From contig JAWQFM010000026.1 of NCBI GenBank assembly GCA_033442325.1, positions 228,249 through 292,248 on the forward strand: a stretch of DNA of 64,000 nucleotides. Reading direction: 5' to 3'. Positions within the stretch are counted from its first letter, which is position 1. The number at the start of each line of letters is the position of its first letter. Under the pieces are notes generated by a model that was not told where the DNA came from, did not search any database, and saw nothing but the letters and a program-made list of their open reading frames with translations. Origin of the DNA: Salpingoeca rosetta. Lineage: Eukaryota; Protista; Choanoflagellata. A program made the translations under genes and the position numbers. This document shows, in pieces, positions 32,487 through 37,400 of this stretch.

Positions 32487-34366
32487 AGCAACAGTGTGTT
32501 CACGCCATCACCATCGCCAGCAGCGGGGGTGTTTGCGACTGCGTTTACTGGTAGCGATGCGCTGGATGCACACCTGCACGCCAGCAGCCAGACGCCACAG
32601 CAGCAGCACTTGTGCAGGGCTACGCTCGCCCGGTTTGTTGACGCGCTGTGCGGCGTTGTGGAGTGTCTTGCTGCAACCACACCAGAGCTTACGCAGCGGT
32701 ACGGGGGCGTGCGTGTTGTACGCCAGGCGTCCATGGTGACAGACGGCCACCTCCGCGACGTGGCTGCTGGCGCTGGCATCATTATTACGCTCGACCCGTG
32801 CGTTGTGCTGTTTGCCACCAGCAGCCAGAGCAGTGATGCTCGGCAGCAGCACCATCAGCAGCAGCAACAGCAGGCGAATGTGCGGATATGCAACTGCATC
32901 TACGACGAAGACGCAGAGGCCTCTGCGCGTTGGACGCTTCGCCCACCCAGCACACAACCACTCACGAATGGTGGTGGTAAAGGTGAAGGTGGTGGTGGTT
33001 GTGGTGTTGCTGGTGGGAAGAAGCCCAATGCGCCTGCTCGACAGCACGCTCAGCAACAGACTCGTCAAGACAGCAGCAACAGTGGTCACAAGACCAACGG
33101 CACGGCAAACAACACGGCGAACAACACAGCAAACAACAAGGCCAACAACACAGCAAAGGGCAAGGCGAACAACAAGGCAAGCCGAAAGGCAAAGGGGAAG
33201 GCAAGACGCAAGGCAACCACCACCACCACCAGCAGCAGCAGCAGCGACAGCAGCATTGCAAGGGGGTTCACGCGCAGCAGGAACGCCAAGGCAGGTGCAG
33301 ACGACACACCCAGCACCGCAATCACCGTCACAGCTTCCCCTGCAGTCTCCGCATCGCCCAACACACCCTCATCCCTAGCAGCCGCTTCCACTTCATCATC
33401 ATCGCCACCACCATCAGCATCGTTGTCGATGTTTGCGTTGGTGCGTGCGCTGCCGTGGGTGCCCCCGCATCCCCGCCTGTGCGGCCTTCCAACACGCGAT
33501 CTCCCATCCCCGGCCACTTGGGTGGACCTGCACAGCGCCCTCCCGCGCCAATCCGCGTTTGATATTGCAACGCGCACAGTGCCGCCACCGCCACTGGCAC
33601 ACCAGCCGACATCAGCAGCACCACTTGCCATTGCACCAGCATCAGCAGCAACAACAACAGCAACGGCAGCAACGGCAGCAACGGCAGCAACGGCAGCAGC
33701 AGCAGTAGATGCGGCCATGTCATCGGGCAGTGGAAGCAAGACGCTTCGCTTTGCTGCTGTGCCGAGCACGCCTGGACTGGATGCCACGTTTGCTTCGCAA
33801 CTGCAGACGTCGCTGTGGTGCATCCCCGAGGCGTTACAGCACGTATTTGACATCAGCAGCAGCGCATTCACGTTCAGCCGCATTCTTCTGTCGCGCATTG
33901 CCTTTGGCACCATTGTGTTCACGCCGACGCTTGCCGAAGACGCTGCAGAGGCGCTCGTGGACCTGACGGCTGCTGCAGGCACACACGGCCCGGAGCAACG
34001 CACCCACAGCACACCGATGGCTGCAGGCAGCAGCAGCAACGGGCGTGGCAGCACAGTCGGTGAGCAGATGGCATCACACCAGCGGGACCAGCAGCAGGGC
34101 AAGGTGTCGTCCTTCGCAGTACCGCCGCCATCGCAACCGCTGTTGCAGGTGATTGTGACGACGCGCAGTGCGCTGCCAAGTTTCACCACCATGTACCCGG
34201 ACGTGGTGGTGTGCGGGGTATGGTCGGCTTCCACCCTTGCTGCACTCAAGCAGTTTTGCAAGGCGTTTGCCACCATCAACTATGACGCGAATTGCGCTCT
34301 GTCATCACAACCACAGCAGCAGCAGCAGCAGCAGCAGCAGTTCGTGGTCAACGAAGCAGCAGCAGC

Positions 34367-34404
<38 letters not shown>

Positions 34405-37400
34405 GAATGACAGCAGCAACGGCCGTAACAGCAGCAAGCGGTGCCGGCACTGACGACATCAACGATGGCGATGACGAGGTGGTGGTGATTGACGAGAGTG
34501 CCACGCAGCGGCTCGCACACGCGCTGGACACTAGCAGCGAGAGCAGCGAGAGCAGCGAGAGCGAGAGTTCTGGGGGCGACCACAGCAGCGATGAAGACTA
34601 CAATGTGGGTGAGGAGGACACCGGTGATGAGGAGAGTGAATACGAGAGAGGAAGCGAGACAACGAGCGACGAGGACAATGCGAGTGAAGAGGACATTGCT
34701 GGTGGGAGGCGCCTGTTTGTTGGGACGCGCGCGTCAAGGCGGACAGCAGAGGTTAACGGAAGTAAGAGAACAAAACACAACCGTAGCACAGGCCGCAGTA
34801 AGCGCAGTAATGGCAGAGGAAACGATGAGGACAGCGACAGCAGTAACAGCAGCGATGTTGTGCACGTCAAAGCAGGGGCAGCAAGCAGGGGCAAACGATT
34901 GGTGTTCGTCTCCAGCAGCAATGACACTAGTAGCAATGATGGCAGCAGCAGCAGTGGCAGCAGTGATGAAAGTGACAGTGACGGTGACAAGGAGCGGCAG
35001 GCAAAGGGTACGGAACCCAGCGGCAACAAGGGCGAAACGACAGCACAGGCAGAGTCAACCGTGAGCCCGTTTGTTGTGATTATGGACGCGGTATGCCTGC
35101 GCTTCTTGCGTGCGCGCAGCACCAACGCAACCGGTGCGCGTGGTCATGACGTGGTGCCACTCTCAACGGTTATCGACACCATGCTTCGCACCGCAGACGT
35201 AGAGCGGTTTGCGTGCATGGGCGTGACGCGTTGGCACACTGGGTGGGCAGATGCCACTTCCGACACCACCTCCGATACAAGTGGGGTGCTTGAGCCAGCA
35301 CAGAAATACGCGCACGGGCATGTTTACTCGTTTGTGCTGCTGAACGCAGATGCAACGCGTGATGTGCACTACCGCGTTGAGGATTCTGTGTGGGAGGATG
35401 TGCGGTTCAACGAGCGCCTGCATGCGCGCGGGCTGGTTGTCCTCAAGCACCGCCTCCTCTCCGTTGTTGTTCGCCACTCCGTGGCCGACGACCGCGCCAG
35501 TGCTGGTGGTGACACTGACGCCAATGCCAGCAGCCACGCCAGCATCTCCACTGGACATACGAGTGCGCCGGTAGCGCGAGGGCGCAGCGCCGTGTTGTCA
35601 TCGTCAAGAGGACCGGCAGCAGCAGCAGCAGCAGCATTACTACCACCAGCAGCAACAGCGATGCAAGCAGTTACTGGAGCAGCAACGGCGGCACCACTGG
35701 GAGGCAGCCAGCCACTCGTGTTCTGTGTGCCAAACCTCTCCATCCTCCATGCTGCTGGCGGGCAGCGTGGCCTGGGTATGCAGGAAGACGACGACTGTGT
35801 TGAGACGGCTGCCGTGACAATGAGCGTGACGTTGGCCGAGCTCGGCCTTCACGCTGACGGGCCAGGCGTGAACTACATGCGCATGTGTCGCGCCATTACG
35901 CGCAGCCTGCGGGGCGTGCTGGCAGCCAGCGACCCTGCAGCTGCTGGCCTCTTGCACACTGTTGGCATTGCAGAGCCGCTGCTGCTGCTACATCCGAACC
36001 CACCACCGCAAGGGCACGTGGTGCACGTGTCTGTGTCTGTGAGTGGATCGCAGCCACCGCCATCGCTTGTGTTTGAGCCAAGATCTCCAGCGCCTGTTGG
36101 CTGCATGCTATCGCTGCTCACGGCTGGAGGGCTGATTGCACACGACGCCGTCGTTGTTGTCCCGCCCACCTGGCCACTGGTGCCTGCATGCAATCGCTTC
36201 GCCCCCGCCATCACGGCGCCCCCTACCACTCCAAGCAATGGTCGCAACGGCAGCGGCCGCGGCCGGGGCCGGGGTCGACGGAACAACTCCGCAGGCAAGG
36301 GTGGATCGCCTGCCTTGAGTATGGTGAGAGCTGCAGTTCAGTTGCACGCACCGGTGCTGTGTGTGAGCAGTGACGAAGCGATGGCAGTGCTGATGGCTCT
36401 GAAGCAGCACCCACAGGGCGAGTGTGTGCGCCTTGTGGCTGTGCGCCCTGCCCACCCTGCCACTGAGCTGTCTGCGGCTCTGATCACACCCACGCGATGC
36501 CACAGCGCGTTCCTGCCGAGTGTTGGCTGGCACCTGGTAACACCGGCATCACACGCCAGAGAGCTGCAGACAGAGCTCCCACCGTCTTCGTTCACGCAGT
36601 CCGAACAGCAAAAGACACCGCGGCAGCTGAGGAGGCAACGACAGAAAGAGAGAAAAATCGCAGACAATCAGCAGCAACAACAGCAACAGAGGCAGGCTGC
36701 TGCCCAAGGGAAGGGCACCAAGGCTGGGGAAGCAAGCAAAACAGACATCGCAGCGGCTGCAGTTGTTGCGGCGATGAAGATGGACGGGGGCGCTCCGGAA
36801 GCGCTTGGAAAGAAGAAGACGAAGCACACAAAGGCAACACCGAGCAAGAAACAAGCCGAGTCACAGCAGCAGCATCACGAACAACAGCAGCAACAGGAGA
36901 AGAAGGAGAAGAAGAAGGAGAAAAACAGGAAGAAACAGCAGCAGGAGGAGGAGGAGGAGAAGAGGAAGAAGGGCAATGGTGTGCAAGAAGTGGCGTCTTC
37001 AGCAGCTGCGGCAACCACGACCCCAGAGCCCCTGGCCAAGAAAGCGAAGAAACAGCCATCAAAGCAGCCACAGAGCGCAAAGACAGAGAAGAAGGCAGAG
37101 ATGAAGGTGGGCAAGGTGGAGCCAGCAAGCAACATAGAAGGTGAGAAGCAAGGCACCACAGTTGCCATGAGGAAGCACACAGCGCAACCGCTGGTCAGAG
37201 ATATGGCAGAACCGACAGGAGGTACCGAGCAAAAGAAGGGTGTGTTGCTCAAGGCAGCAAGCGCACAGATGAAGCAGCGAAAGGCCAAGGTCAATGCACG
37301 TTCCTCCTCCTCCTCCTCCTCCTCCTCCTCGTCGTCGTCGCCCTCTTCTTCATCATCCTCTTCTTCTTCATCATCCCCCTCCTCCTCCTCTTCGTCTTCG

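What the first reader, a model, noticed from the sequence alone, without database searches (positions are those of the whole stretch)
33790..35480. GREB1-like glycosyltransferase domain hidden in an 11-kb low-complexity exon
Seen: ordered blocks collinear with the GREB1 C-terminal domain, including PFVVIMDA (DD-motif position, here DA) and WEDVRFN (acidic motif retained). Established: the GREB1 domain is related to TET/JBP-associated glycosyltransferases, including the kinetoplastid base-J glucosyltransferase and phage DNA-modifying enzymes. Inference: this is a pre-metazoan GREB1 relative. With its RS-rich N-terminus and basic zinc module, it may glycosylate nucleic acid or nuclear proteins. 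The DD-to-DA change could reduce metal binding.
Basis: partly seen in the sequence, partly recalled or inferred. Interest (0 to 1): 0.75.

Follow-up and report, generated by a model that had tools for sequence, protein, structure and literature searches.

The report
Divergent helicase-less GREB1-type glycosyltransferase gene
A giant, mostly disordered protein of the choanoflagellate Salpingoeca rosetta really does hide a GREB1/TAGT-type sugar-transferase domain, but it is a divergent third copy that has lost the helicase and two predicted sugar-donor-binding residues, so it is a new variant of a family already known in choanoflagellates rather than a new kind of enzyme.

Summary
Observation confirmed. 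Window 33807-35492 (+), inside an 11.2-kb exon, encodes a TAGT/GREB1-type glycosyltransferase domain split by two low-complexity loops of about 50 and 255 aa. Pfam TAGT scores E 2e-5, 25.1 bits, just under the 27.5 cut-off. BLASTP to a canonical copy in the same genome gives E 4e-22.

The genome is Salpingoeca rosetta. It holds two canonical GREB1-like genes (cpSF2 helicase + TAGT; one is PTSG_06081). Other agents of this scan described those copies on other DNA.

The window gene is a third, divergent paralogue with no detectable helicase. It has an RS-rich N-terminus, Lys-rich tails and a spliced C-terminal 8-Cys module. A search of 1.84 billion proteins found one orthologue, an unidentified Logan contig. 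It shares the same exon end and the same changed residues: DD to (D/E)A, GR arginine to an acidic residue, GIGxxR to K. The WED..FNER motif is kept. The two form a clade with 100% bootstrap.

No TET/JBP domain was found in the genome, so base-J-like DNA glycosylation is unlikely. Shin et al. 2021 already report GREB1-like proteins in choanoflagellates. The structure models were too poor to test the fold.

Most likely this is a nuclear protein with a remodelled, probably weak or inactive, protein-directed glycosyltransferase module. Its activity is untested.

The parts
29268..29294 (+). Putative exon 1 (ATG + 8 codons), followed by a GTGGGT donor
   Evidence: Hand-read. Inference only; there is no RNA evidence.
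29295..29525 (+). Putative in-frame intron (231 nt) rich in (CT)n/(CA)n, ending in AG. It stays open in frame, so the mechanical ORF reads through it.
   Evidence: GC3 is 0.56, like the other introns. Inference.
29526..40735 (+). Giant exon of 11,210 nt. It ends 2 nt into a codon, before a GTGAGT donor.
   Evidence: The orthologous exon on L020 ends at the same place and in the same phase, just after the CPxC pair.
30885..31229 (+). Densest Arg/Ser (RS-type) stretch of the disordered N-terminal third; further RS-rich patches lie at 29874-30773.
   Evidence: Composition scan; translation.
31485..32921 (+). Ordered-looking N-terminal blocks with no family assignment. One block (residues 1148-1190) weakly resembles PTSG_06081 residues 526-567, upstream of that protein's helicase.
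   Evidence: no Pfam hit. BLASTP E 0.044 and hhalign E 0.19; neither is significant.
33807..33983 (+). TAGT first strand block. The canonical Gly-Arg after strand 1 is replaced by Ala-Glu-Asp (E1557/D1558, 33936-33941).
   Evidence: Alignments. This part of the model is confident (pLDDT 65-83).
33984..34133 (+). Low-complexity loop 1 (about 50 aa) inside the domain
34134..34292 (+). TAGT strand-helix-strand block (the YPDVVVC motif). K1661 (34248-34250) sits where the canonical copies have the Arg of GIGxxR.
   Evidence: BLASTP E 1e-7; model pLDDT 79-90.
34293..35057 (+). Low-complexity loop 2 (about 255 aa: poly-Q, poly-T, Asp/Glu/Ser-rich), inserted where the canonical copies have 18 aa and the orthologue about 62 aa.
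   Evidence: That it is coding is inferred from the open frame only; GC3 of 0.59 is not decisive.
35061..35117 (+). Strand carrying the DxD-equivalent: D1940 (35085-35087) and A1941 (35088-35090). The canonical copies read DD; the orthologue reads EA.
35145..35492 (+). TAGT C-terminal half, including the RW, SFxLLN and WED..FNER motifs (E2043/D2044 at 35394-35399).
   Evidence: Pfam TAGT E 1.8e-5; BLASTP E 4e-22.
35655..36629 (+). Ordered region after the domain. By eye it is collinear with the C-terminal region of the canonical copies.
   Evidence: alignment. hhalign E 0.13, not significant; no Pfam or Atlas hit.
36630..40640 (+). Disordered tail of about 1,300 aa with Lys-rich, Gln-rich and poly-Ser tracts.
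40690..40735 (+). Basic run and the first CxxC pair of the C-terminal Cys module (end of the giant exon).
   Evidence: the same CPxC is at the end of the orthologous exon.
40936..41036 (+). Exon 3, carrying the second CxxC pair.
   Evidence: Hand-read splice sites, AG/GT. No Pfam hit for this exon alone.
41346..41414 (+). Exon 4, carrying a CxxxC pair.
   Evidence: Hand-read.
41619..41687 (+). Exon 5, carrying the last CxxC pair.
   Evidence: Hand-read.
41999..42027 (+). Last exon and stop codon (TGA at 42025-42027).
   Evidence: Hand-read.

Best explanation
Shown: window 29268-42027 (+) holds a real gene of Salpingoeca rosetta. I read it as six exons, one of them 11.2 kb long, encoding about 3,830 aa that are mostly disordered. 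The only globular part with statistically supported homology is a TAGT/GREB1-type glycosyltransferase domain (residues about 1514-2075), interrupted by two low-complexity loops. The gene is a divergent third paralogue of the two canonical GREB1-like genes (helicase + TAGT) in the same genome, and it has no detectable cpSF2 helicase. With one orthologue from an unidentified organism it forms a separate clade. Both members share a remodelled predicted donor site: the Arg after strand 1 is now acidic, the second Asp of the DD motif is Ala, and the Arg/His of the GIG motif is Lys. The first acidic residue, the ED..FNER motif and the structural core motifs are kept. Inferred: the RS-rich and Lys-rich disordered regions and the C-terminal Cys module place the protein in the nucleus. 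The domain acts on, or binds, proteins rather than DNA bases. Because two of the residues whose joint mutation gave the GT-dead human GREB1 are missing, it probably has weak, altered or no transferase activity. It would then serve mainly as a conserved binding or scaffold module. My rough split is about 45% non-catalytic, 35% active with altered metal or donor use, and the rest other.
For: The gene is real: 3823 stop-free codons. The orthologous exon on L020 ends at the same codon phase with the same GTGAGT donor. The ML tree shows branch lengths comparable to the canonical copies. Family: Pfam TAGT E 2e-5. The orthologue's domain scores 27.8 bits, above the cut-off. BLASTP to the C7 copy gives E 4e-22. 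The canonical copies carry PF20692 + PF20691, and one of them is PTSG_06081 [Salpingoeca rosetta]. No helicase: there is no PF20692 hit in the window by genome search, by Pfam scan of eight sub-pieces, or by tblastn. Separate clade: the split (window, P0002) against (C7, C15, P0003) has 100% bootstrap on 171 columns, and the best hit of P0002 in this genome is the window locus, in four collinear pieces. Site changes shared by both members. Relevance of those positions: the GT-dead human GREB1 carried R1553L, H1609, D1645A, D1646A, R1737L and D1742A (PMC7968844, Methods). Not DNA-directed: no Tet_JBP in the genome; unicellular holozoan genomes are reported to lack DNMTs (PMC11244446); human GREB1 is reported to O-GlcNAcylate a protein (PMC7968844).
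Against: No activity, localisation or expression data exist for this gene. The mapping of the human residue numbers onto the motifs rests on motif order and spacing only: R1382, R1463, D1500/D1501 and D1628 in PTSG_06081 against 1553, 1609, 1645/1646 and 1742 in human. No animal sequence was aligned here. Strong conservation of ED..FNER and of the strand around (D/E)A between two members only 37% identical suggests that the site still does something. Some GT-A enzymes work with one acidic residue or without metal (general knowledge). The window domain itself is 2 bits under Pfam's cut-off. The structure models were poor (mean pLDDT 43 and 51), so the GT-A fold and the position of the DA strand in the sheet are not shown. 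Nuclear localisation is inferred from composition only.
Confidence: 0.6

Rival explanations
1. It is a fully active nuclear protein glycosyltransferase. The changed residues re-tune donor or metal use: for example, the new acidic pair after strand 1 could take over the role of the lost second Asp. The disordered RS-rich and Lys-rich regions and the Cys module bring it to substrates such as splicing or chromatin proteins.
For: The ED..FNER motif, the first acidic residue of the DD position, and the YPDVVxC, RW and SFxLxN motifs are all conserved between two members that are only 37% identical in the core. Branch lengths are not inflated relative to the canonical copies. The substitutions are the same in both members, which indicates a selected state. 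Human GREB1 is reported to be an active protein O-GlcNAc transferase (PMC7968844).
Against: Two positions among the six mutated together to kill human GREB1 activity are non-conservatively changed (PMC7968844). Only two sequences define the subfamily, so the constraint is poorly sampled. There is no biochemical data.
Confidence: 0.3
2. This is the first reader's idea: a nucleic-acid glycosyltransferase like the kinetoplastid base-J glucosyltransferase or the phage TAGTs, modifying hydroxymethylated bases in DNA, or RNA.
For: The TAGT family includes DNA-base glycosyltransferases (PMC7968844, citing Iyer et al. 2013). The canonical copies weakly match phage phrog_842, a beta-glucosyl-HMC glucosyltransferase (E 0.003-0.004). 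The protein is very basic in places and carries a Cys module.
Against: No Tet_JBP domain was found anywhere in the 55-Mb genome. Choanoflagellate genomes are reported to lack DNMTs (PMC11244446), so no hydroxymethyl-base supply is evident. The window domain itself does not match the phage family. It groups with GREB1-like proteins, and it has lost the helicase that could bind nucleic acid.
Confidence: 0.07
3. It is not a working gene: either a decaying duplicate whose frame is kept open by repetitive composition, or a chimera of exons and in-frame introns so that the domain is not expressed as read.
For: No protein containing this domain was found in the two protein libraries, although the paralogue from the same genome is there. 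At least one in-frame, stop-free intron seems to be hidden in the ORF. GC3 of the big loop insert (0.59) lies between that of exons and introns.
Against: With about 60% GC, 3823 codons without a stop are not expected by chance, and the other frames reach 397 aa at most. The orthologue conserves the domain blocks, the changed residues and the exon boundary. Core motifs are intact.
Confidence: 0.03

Closest known systems
Canonical GREB1-like proteins of Salpingoeca rosetta (PTSG_06081 on contig C15, and its 90%-identical twin on C7)
   Same: The TAGT domain has the same order of blocks and is 41-43% identical in the conserved core. The region after the domain is collinear by eye. Both kinds of gene have very large exons.
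   Different: The canonical copies carry a full cpSF2-GREB1 helicase (PF20692, E 1e-73 to 1e-86) and the GR, GIGxxR and DD residues. The window gene has no detectable helicase and has changed those residues. It is twice as long because of disordered inserts. It has an RS-rich N-terminus and a C-terminal 8-Cys module.
Human GREB1 (Shin et al. 2021, PMC7968844)
   Same: It belongs to the same glycosyltransferase domain family (Pfam TAGT was built on it). It too is a large multi-part protein with a Zn-binding module, and it is partly nuclear. It is the best functional analogy: a protein-directed O-GlcNAc transferase.
   Different: Human GREB1 has, in order, an N-terminal Zn-binding domain, an inactive cpSF2 helicase and the GT domain. 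Here the helicase is absent and the Cys module is C-terminal. Two of the six residues mutated in the GT-dead human protein appear to be missing here. S. rosetta has no oestrogen receptor (PMC7968844 notes that these lineages lack it).
Kinetoplastid base-J glucosyltransferase and phage TET-associated glycosyltransferases
   Same: They share the domain superfamily (Pfam TAGT). The canonical S. rosetta copies weakly match the phage HMC glucosyltransferase phrog_842.
   Different: Those enzymes work downstream of a TET/JBP hydroxylase, and none was found in this genome. The window domain gives no phage-family hit. No kinetoplastid sequence could be fetched, so there was no direct comparison.
P0002 (1543-aa open exon on Logan contigs from SRR14727191 and SRR14727189; organism unknown, GC about 41%)
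   Same: It is the only orthologue found. It has the same (D/E)A strand, the same acidic replacement of GR and the same Lys in the GIG block. It has no helicase, an enlarged loop at the same site, and the same exon end after CPxC.
   Different: The exon is much shorter (4.6 kb against 11.2 kb) because the disordered regions are far smaller. Identity in the core is only 37%. Its downstream exons are not on the contig.

Membership tests
TAGT (Pfam PF20691) glycosyltransferase domain family | Match to the family profile at or above the curated cut-off (27.5 bits) | tested here: not met
   The window domain scores 25.1-25.5 bits, E about 2e-5, and covers only profile positions 76-200. It falls short by 2 bits. 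The orthologue's domain scores 27.8 bits.
TAGT (Pfam PF20691) glycosyltransferase domain family | Significant pairwise homology to proteins that are bona fide members | tested here: met
   BLASTP to the C7 copy (TAGT 76.6 bits) gives E 4e-22 and E 1e-7 for two collinear blocks. phmmer against 1.84e9 proteins returns only TAGT-bearing proteins plus the orthologue.
TAGT (Pfam PF20691) glycosyltransferase domain family | DD (DxD-type) motif at the end of the central strand; D1645 and D1646 were among the six residues mutated in the GT-dead human GREB1 | tested here: not met
   The window reads D1940-A1941 and the orthologue E-A; the three canonical sequences read D-D.
TAGT (Pfam PF20691) glycosyltransferase domain family | Gly-Arg after the first strand (probably human R1553) | tested here: not met
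   The window has Ala-Glu-Asp and the orthologue Ser-Ala-Asp where the three canonical sequences have Gly-Arg. The mapping to the human residue number is inferred from spacing only.
TAGT (Pfam PF20691) glycosyltransferase domain family | Acidic ED followed by FN(E/R)R near the C-terminal end of the domain (probably human D1742) | tested here: met
   E, D, F, N and the final R of the motif are invariant in all five sequences; the residue between N and R is Glu in four and Arg in one. The window has E2043/D2044.
TAGT (Pfam PF20691) glycosyltransferase domain family | GT-A (Fringe-like) fold | tested here: inconclusive
   AlphaFold2 with five-sequence alignments gave mean pLDDT of 42.8 (window) and 51.3 (orthologue); only the first 120-150 residues are confident. 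Foldseek found nothing at E <= 0.001. With VIA-align, 6 of the top 9 chains are GT-A glycosyltransferases aligned over model residues 27-189, but at Z 5.1-5.8, below the noise level of about 8 stated by the tool. No solved relative was found by sequence.
GREB1 proper (architecture as in Shin et al. 2021) | Circularly permuted SF2 helicase domain (PF20692) N-terminal to the GT domain | tested here: not met
   There is no hit in the window at E <= 0.1 in the genome-wide family search, which does find C7 and C15. The Pfam scans of the whole frame and of eight sub-pieces, at thresholds up to E 10, gave none. tblastn to the paralogues gave none. Only about 350, mostly low-complexity, residues lie between the N-terminal blocks and the GT domain.
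GREB1 proper (architecture as in Shin et al. 2021) | N-terminal Zn-binding domain | not tested
No Cys cluster is evident in the N-terminal half. An 8-Cys module sits at the C-terminus instead. The two exon pieces searched on their own gave no significant Pfam hit, and zf-C4 does not hit it.
Base-J type DNA glycosylation system (JBP/TET + JGT) | A TET/JBP dioxygenase in the same genome to supply the hydroxymethyl base | tested here: not met
   PF12851 gave zero candidates in the six-frame search of all 55.4 Mb. A domain split across many short exons could be missed.

The most novel reading that the evidence does not exclude
The window gene and its one orthologue could represent an old sister lineage of GREB1 without the helicase, in which the glycosyltransferase domain has been rewired (new acidic pair after strand 1, a single acidic residue at the DxD site) and fused to an SR-protein-like RS domain and a Cys module. 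It would then be an active, nucleus-resident glycosyltransferase acting on RNA-processing or chromatin factors, or on RNA itself. That would be a second intracellular glycosylation route besides OGT, older than animals.
Probability: 0.1. Interest if true: 0.75.

Novelty: new variant of a known kind. Interest (0 to 1): 0.4.

Why it matters
GREB1 is the only proposed inducible intracellular O-GlcNAc transferase besides OGT, and what it did before steroid receptors existed is unknown. S. rosetta turns out to carry both the canonical helicase-bearing form (two copies) and a conserved form without the helicase and with a remodelled donor site. It is also a genetically tractable organism. That gives a natural experiment: which parts of the GREB1 active site are needed, and does the family contain non-catalytic 'reader' members? 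The gene also seems to be missing from protein libraries, so family surveys may have overlooked this branch. The find does not change the picture of the family: its presence in choanoflagellates and its link to DNA glycosyltransferases are already published.

Tried and rejected
Searches and tests that gave nothing:
- Kinetoplastid origin (base-J glucosyltransferase orthologue). I considered this at first because of the long same-strand ORFs. I rejected it once introns were seen and the paralogue turned out to be PTSG_06081 of S. rosetta.
- Word-based protein searches with the window frame (residues 1600-2400), with P0002 and with P0001 returned only self hits or nothing.
- Two metagenome scans and one viral scan with family patterns found no confirmed relative.
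- Homology of the N-terminal blocks and of the post-domain region to the canonical copies is not significant: hhalign E 0.19 and 0.13. I claim only collinearity by eye.
- The ESM Atlas look-up of the post-domain region gave no usable hit.
- Both AlphaFold2 models have low confidence. Foldseek gave nothing, and the GT-A chains at the top of the VIA-align list are below the noise level.
- A PDB sequence search with the family profile gave nothing.
- GC3 did not settle whether the 255-aa loop insert is coding.
- A literature look-up of the SRA runs behind P0002 found nothing, so its organism stays unknown.
- Iyer et al. 2013 is not held in the library.
- I rejected MAFFT's placement of the canonical DD opposite an acidic run inside the insert.
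
Full report
**What is at the coordinates.** The window holds one open frame of 3823 codons on the + strand, 29268-40739. No other frame in the area exceeds 397 aa. About 72% of it is low-complexity by a simple entropy and hydrophobicity filter. The ordered-looking islands are at residues 740-867, 963-1029, 1091-1218, 1383-1444, 1479-1689, 1907-2067 and 2130-2454.

**Is it a TAGT/GREB1 domain?**
- Pfam TAGT (PF20691) matches window:33789-35480 at E 2e-5 and 25.1 bits, covering profile positions 77-198 of 205. 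This is just under the curated cut-off of 27.5, and the result is the same on a shorter piece.
- The stronger evidence comes from the same genome. It is 55.4 Mb in 68 contigs, and the window is C26:228249-292248. A six-frame search finds two other loci, on C7 and C15, that match the window domain at E 5e-15 and 6e-14.
- Both loci are clean three-exon genes carrying the circularly permuted SF2 helicase of GREB1 (PF20692, up to 249 bits) followed by TAGT (66-77 bits).
- BLASTP of the window against the C7 copy gives 41% identity over 118 aa (E 4e-22) for the C-terminal half of the domain. It gives 40% over 53 aa (E 1e-7) for the strand block at 34143-34290.
One loop of about 50 aa lies at 33984-34133. 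One of about 255 aa lies at 34293-35057, where the canonical copies have 18 aa.

**Organism and prior knowledge.** The C15 copy is identical to the library protein P0001, named 'hypothetical protein PTSG_06081 [Salpingoeca rosetta]'. Shin et al. [quoted passage not shown] They report that it O-GlcNAcylates ER-alpha. They also state that GREB1-like proteins occur in Choanoflagellatea and several other protist groups. A 'pre-metazoan GREB1 relative' is thus not new in itself. Other agents of this scan have already described the two canonical S. rosetta copies on other DNA.

**What is different about the window copy.**
1. No helicase could be detected. The genome-wide PF20692 search finds C7 and C15 but not C26. 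Pfam scans of the whole frame and of eight sub-pieces, at thresholds up to E 10, give nothing. tblastn against the paralogues gives only the two TAGT blocks. Only about 350, mostly low-complexity, residues separate the N-terminal blocks from the GT domain.
2. A phmmer search of 1.84 billion representative proteins with window:35082-36530 returned only three hits.
   - P0001, the C15 copy.
   - P0003, a cpSF2+TAGT protein on a TARA Oceans scaffold.
   - P0002, a 1543-aa open exon on two 5-kb Logan contigs from SRR14727191 and SRR14727189. Its GC is about 41% and its organism is unknown.
3. P0002 is the orthologue of the window gene.
   - It has the same strand around the DD position, 13 of 17 residues identical.
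   - It also has no helicase and an enlarged loop at the same site.
   - Its exon ends 2 nt into a codon at a GTGAGT donor just after a CPxC pair, exactly as in the window.
   - Its best match in the S. rosetta genome is the window locus, in four collinear pieces.
   - An ML tree on 171 ungapped core columns splits (window, P0002) from (C7, C15, P0003) with 100% bootstrap. The long branches of P0002 and P0003 are not drawn together, which argues against a long-branch artefact.
4. The window protein itself was not found in either library, although its paralogue is there. It may be un- or mis-annotated. I could not verify that.

**The active-site question.**
- Through P0002, the window strand aligns column by column with the canonical DD strand. 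D1940 pairs with the first Asp and A1941 with the second, and the following Cys and Phe are shared. The orthologue reads Glu-Ala.
- Two more changes are shared by both members. The Gly-Arg after the first strand in the three canonical sequences is Ala-Glu-Asp in the window and Ser-Ala-Asp in the orthologue. The Arg of the GIGxxR block is Lys in both.
- The YPDVVxC, RW, SFxLxN and ED..FN(E/R)R motifs are kept.
- The Methods of Shin et al. list the six substitutions of their GT-dead GREB1: R1553L, H1609, D1645A, D1646A, R1737L and D1742A. The order and spacing of R1382, R1463, D1500/D1501 and D1628 in PTSG_06081 parallel 1553, 1609, 1645/1646 and 1742 once inserts are allowed. I therefore infer that the GR, GIGxx(R/H), DD and ED motifs are those residues. 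This mapping is an inference; no human sequence was used or compared.
- On that mapping the window clade lacks two of the predicted donor- or substrate-binding residues, changes one conservatively, and keeps two.

**Fold test.** AlphaFold2 on five-sequence alignments gave mean pLDDT of 42.8 for the window domain and 51.3 for the orthologue. Only the first strand-helix-strand units were confident. Foldseek against the PDB found nothing at E <= 0.001. With VIA-align against 48,161 chains, 6 of the top 9 were GT-A glycosyltransferases (CgT, BcsA, GtrB, TarP, POMGNT1 and a Leptospira GT). They aligned to model residues 27-189, which end at the (D/E)A strand. But Z was 5.1-5.8, below the level the tool itself calls noise, and PLP-fold enzymes were interleaved. 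The fold test is inconclusive. The fold assignment rests on sequence homology.

**DNA or protein target.** No Tet_JBP (PF12851) candidate exists anywhere in the six-frame genome search. The literature states that sequenced unicellular holozoan genomes, choanoflagellates included, encode no DNMTs (PMC11244446). My PF00145 search found two weak loci that I did not characterise. The canonical copies weakly match the phage HMC glucosyltransferase family phrog_842 (E 0.003-0.004), but the window domain does not. A base-J-like role is therefore unlikely. The only experimentally studied GREB1 is reported to act on a protein.

**Gene structure (hand-read, canonical GT..AG sites).**
- Exon 1: 29268-29294.
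- A 231-nt in-frame, microsatellite-rich intron that the mechanical ORF reads through.
- The giant exon: 29526-40735.
- Four small exons: 40936-41036, 41346-41414, 41619-41687 and 41999-42027.
- Together with the end of the giant exon, the small exons spell a basic module with eight Cys in four pairs. The total is about 3,834 aa.
The two exon pieces searched alone gave no significant Pfam hit, and the nuclear-receptor zf-C4 profile does not hit this place.
- The N-terminal third has dense Arg/Ser stretches (30885-31229 and others). The tail has Lys-rich tracts (36843-38948).

**Reading.**
- Shown: a real, conserved, divergent GREB1/TAGT paralogue without a detectable helicase, with a remodelled predicted donor site.
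- Inferred: nuclear localisation, from the RS-rich and Lys-rich regions and the Cys module.
- Inferred: a protein rather than a DNA target, from the missing hydroxylase and the analogy with GREB1.
- Inferred: weak, altered or absent catalysis, from the loss of two residues that were among those mutated to inactivate human GREB1.
- The strong conservation of the remaining site residues keeps an active, re-tuned enzyme as a serious rival.
- The homology of the N-terminal blocks and of the post-domain region to GREB1-like proteins is only suggestive: BLASTP E 0.044, hhalign E 0.19 and 0.13.

**Verdict.** This is a new variant of a known kind and of moderate interest. It offers a natural pair in one tractable organism, a canonical form against a helicase-less form with a remodelled site, for working out what GREB1-type glycosyltransferases did before animals.

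Noticed in passing
G000:C31:210311-210472 (+), outside the window: The nuclear-receptor DNA-binding domain profile zf-C4 (PF00105) scores 24.1 bits (cut-off 21.1), E 0.0026, in this choanoflagellate genome. Nuclear receptors are generally held to be animal-specific, so this may deserve a look, or it may be a chance Cys-rich match.
   Followed up: no
window 34857-34925 and 37683-37757: A short motif (a basic stretch, then G-K-R-L-V-F, then a Ser/Asp run) occurs twice in the disordered parts: once inside the big loop of the TAGT domain and once in the C-terminal tail. The two copies are 46% identical over 85 aa, E 7e-15 without composition correction. It looks like a SUMO-interaction-type linear motif; untested.
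   Followed up: partly
window 40690-42027: The gene ends in a basic module with eight Cys in four pairs, spread over five exons. It was noted separately by the scan as s1-432565. The first CPxC pair and the intron right after it are conserved in the orthologue. There was no significant Pfam hit for the two exon pieces searched, and no zf-C4 hit.
   Followed up: partly
window 1-2000 and 8001-10000: Two AT-rich islands (GC 0.30-0.32, against 0.52-0.64 elsewhere) with long ORFs in several frames on both strands. I did not examine what they are.
   Followed up: no
window 29268-40739 (whole protein): No self hit for this protein in the 1.84-billion-protein library or in the word-indexed search, although the paralogue PTSG_06081 from the same genome is present. 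The gene may be missing or wrongly modelled in the public annotation.
   Followed up: partly
window 28780-29150, 40740-40860, 41040-41200; L020 1-70 and 5090-5103: The introns and flanks of this gene, and the flanks of the orthologous exon in the unknown organism, are packed with (TG)n/(CA)n/(CT)n microsatellites. The Logan contigs break in them.
   Followed up: no
L022 2627-6751 (TARA Oceans scaffold): A 1374-aa GREB1-like protein (cpSF2 + TAGT, with canonical GR and DD) is encoded as one uninterrupted ORF on a marine metagenome scaffold among short intron-less ORFs. Its source organism (protist or large virus) is unknown.
   Followed up: no
G000:C20:1279060-1280268 and C13:996467-998637, outside the window: Two loci match the C5 DNA methylase profile PF00145 above its cut-off (37.8 and 24.9 bits), although the literature says choanoflagellate genomes lack DNMTs. 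They may be the tRNA-methylating DNMT2 type or something else; not characterised.
   Followed up: no
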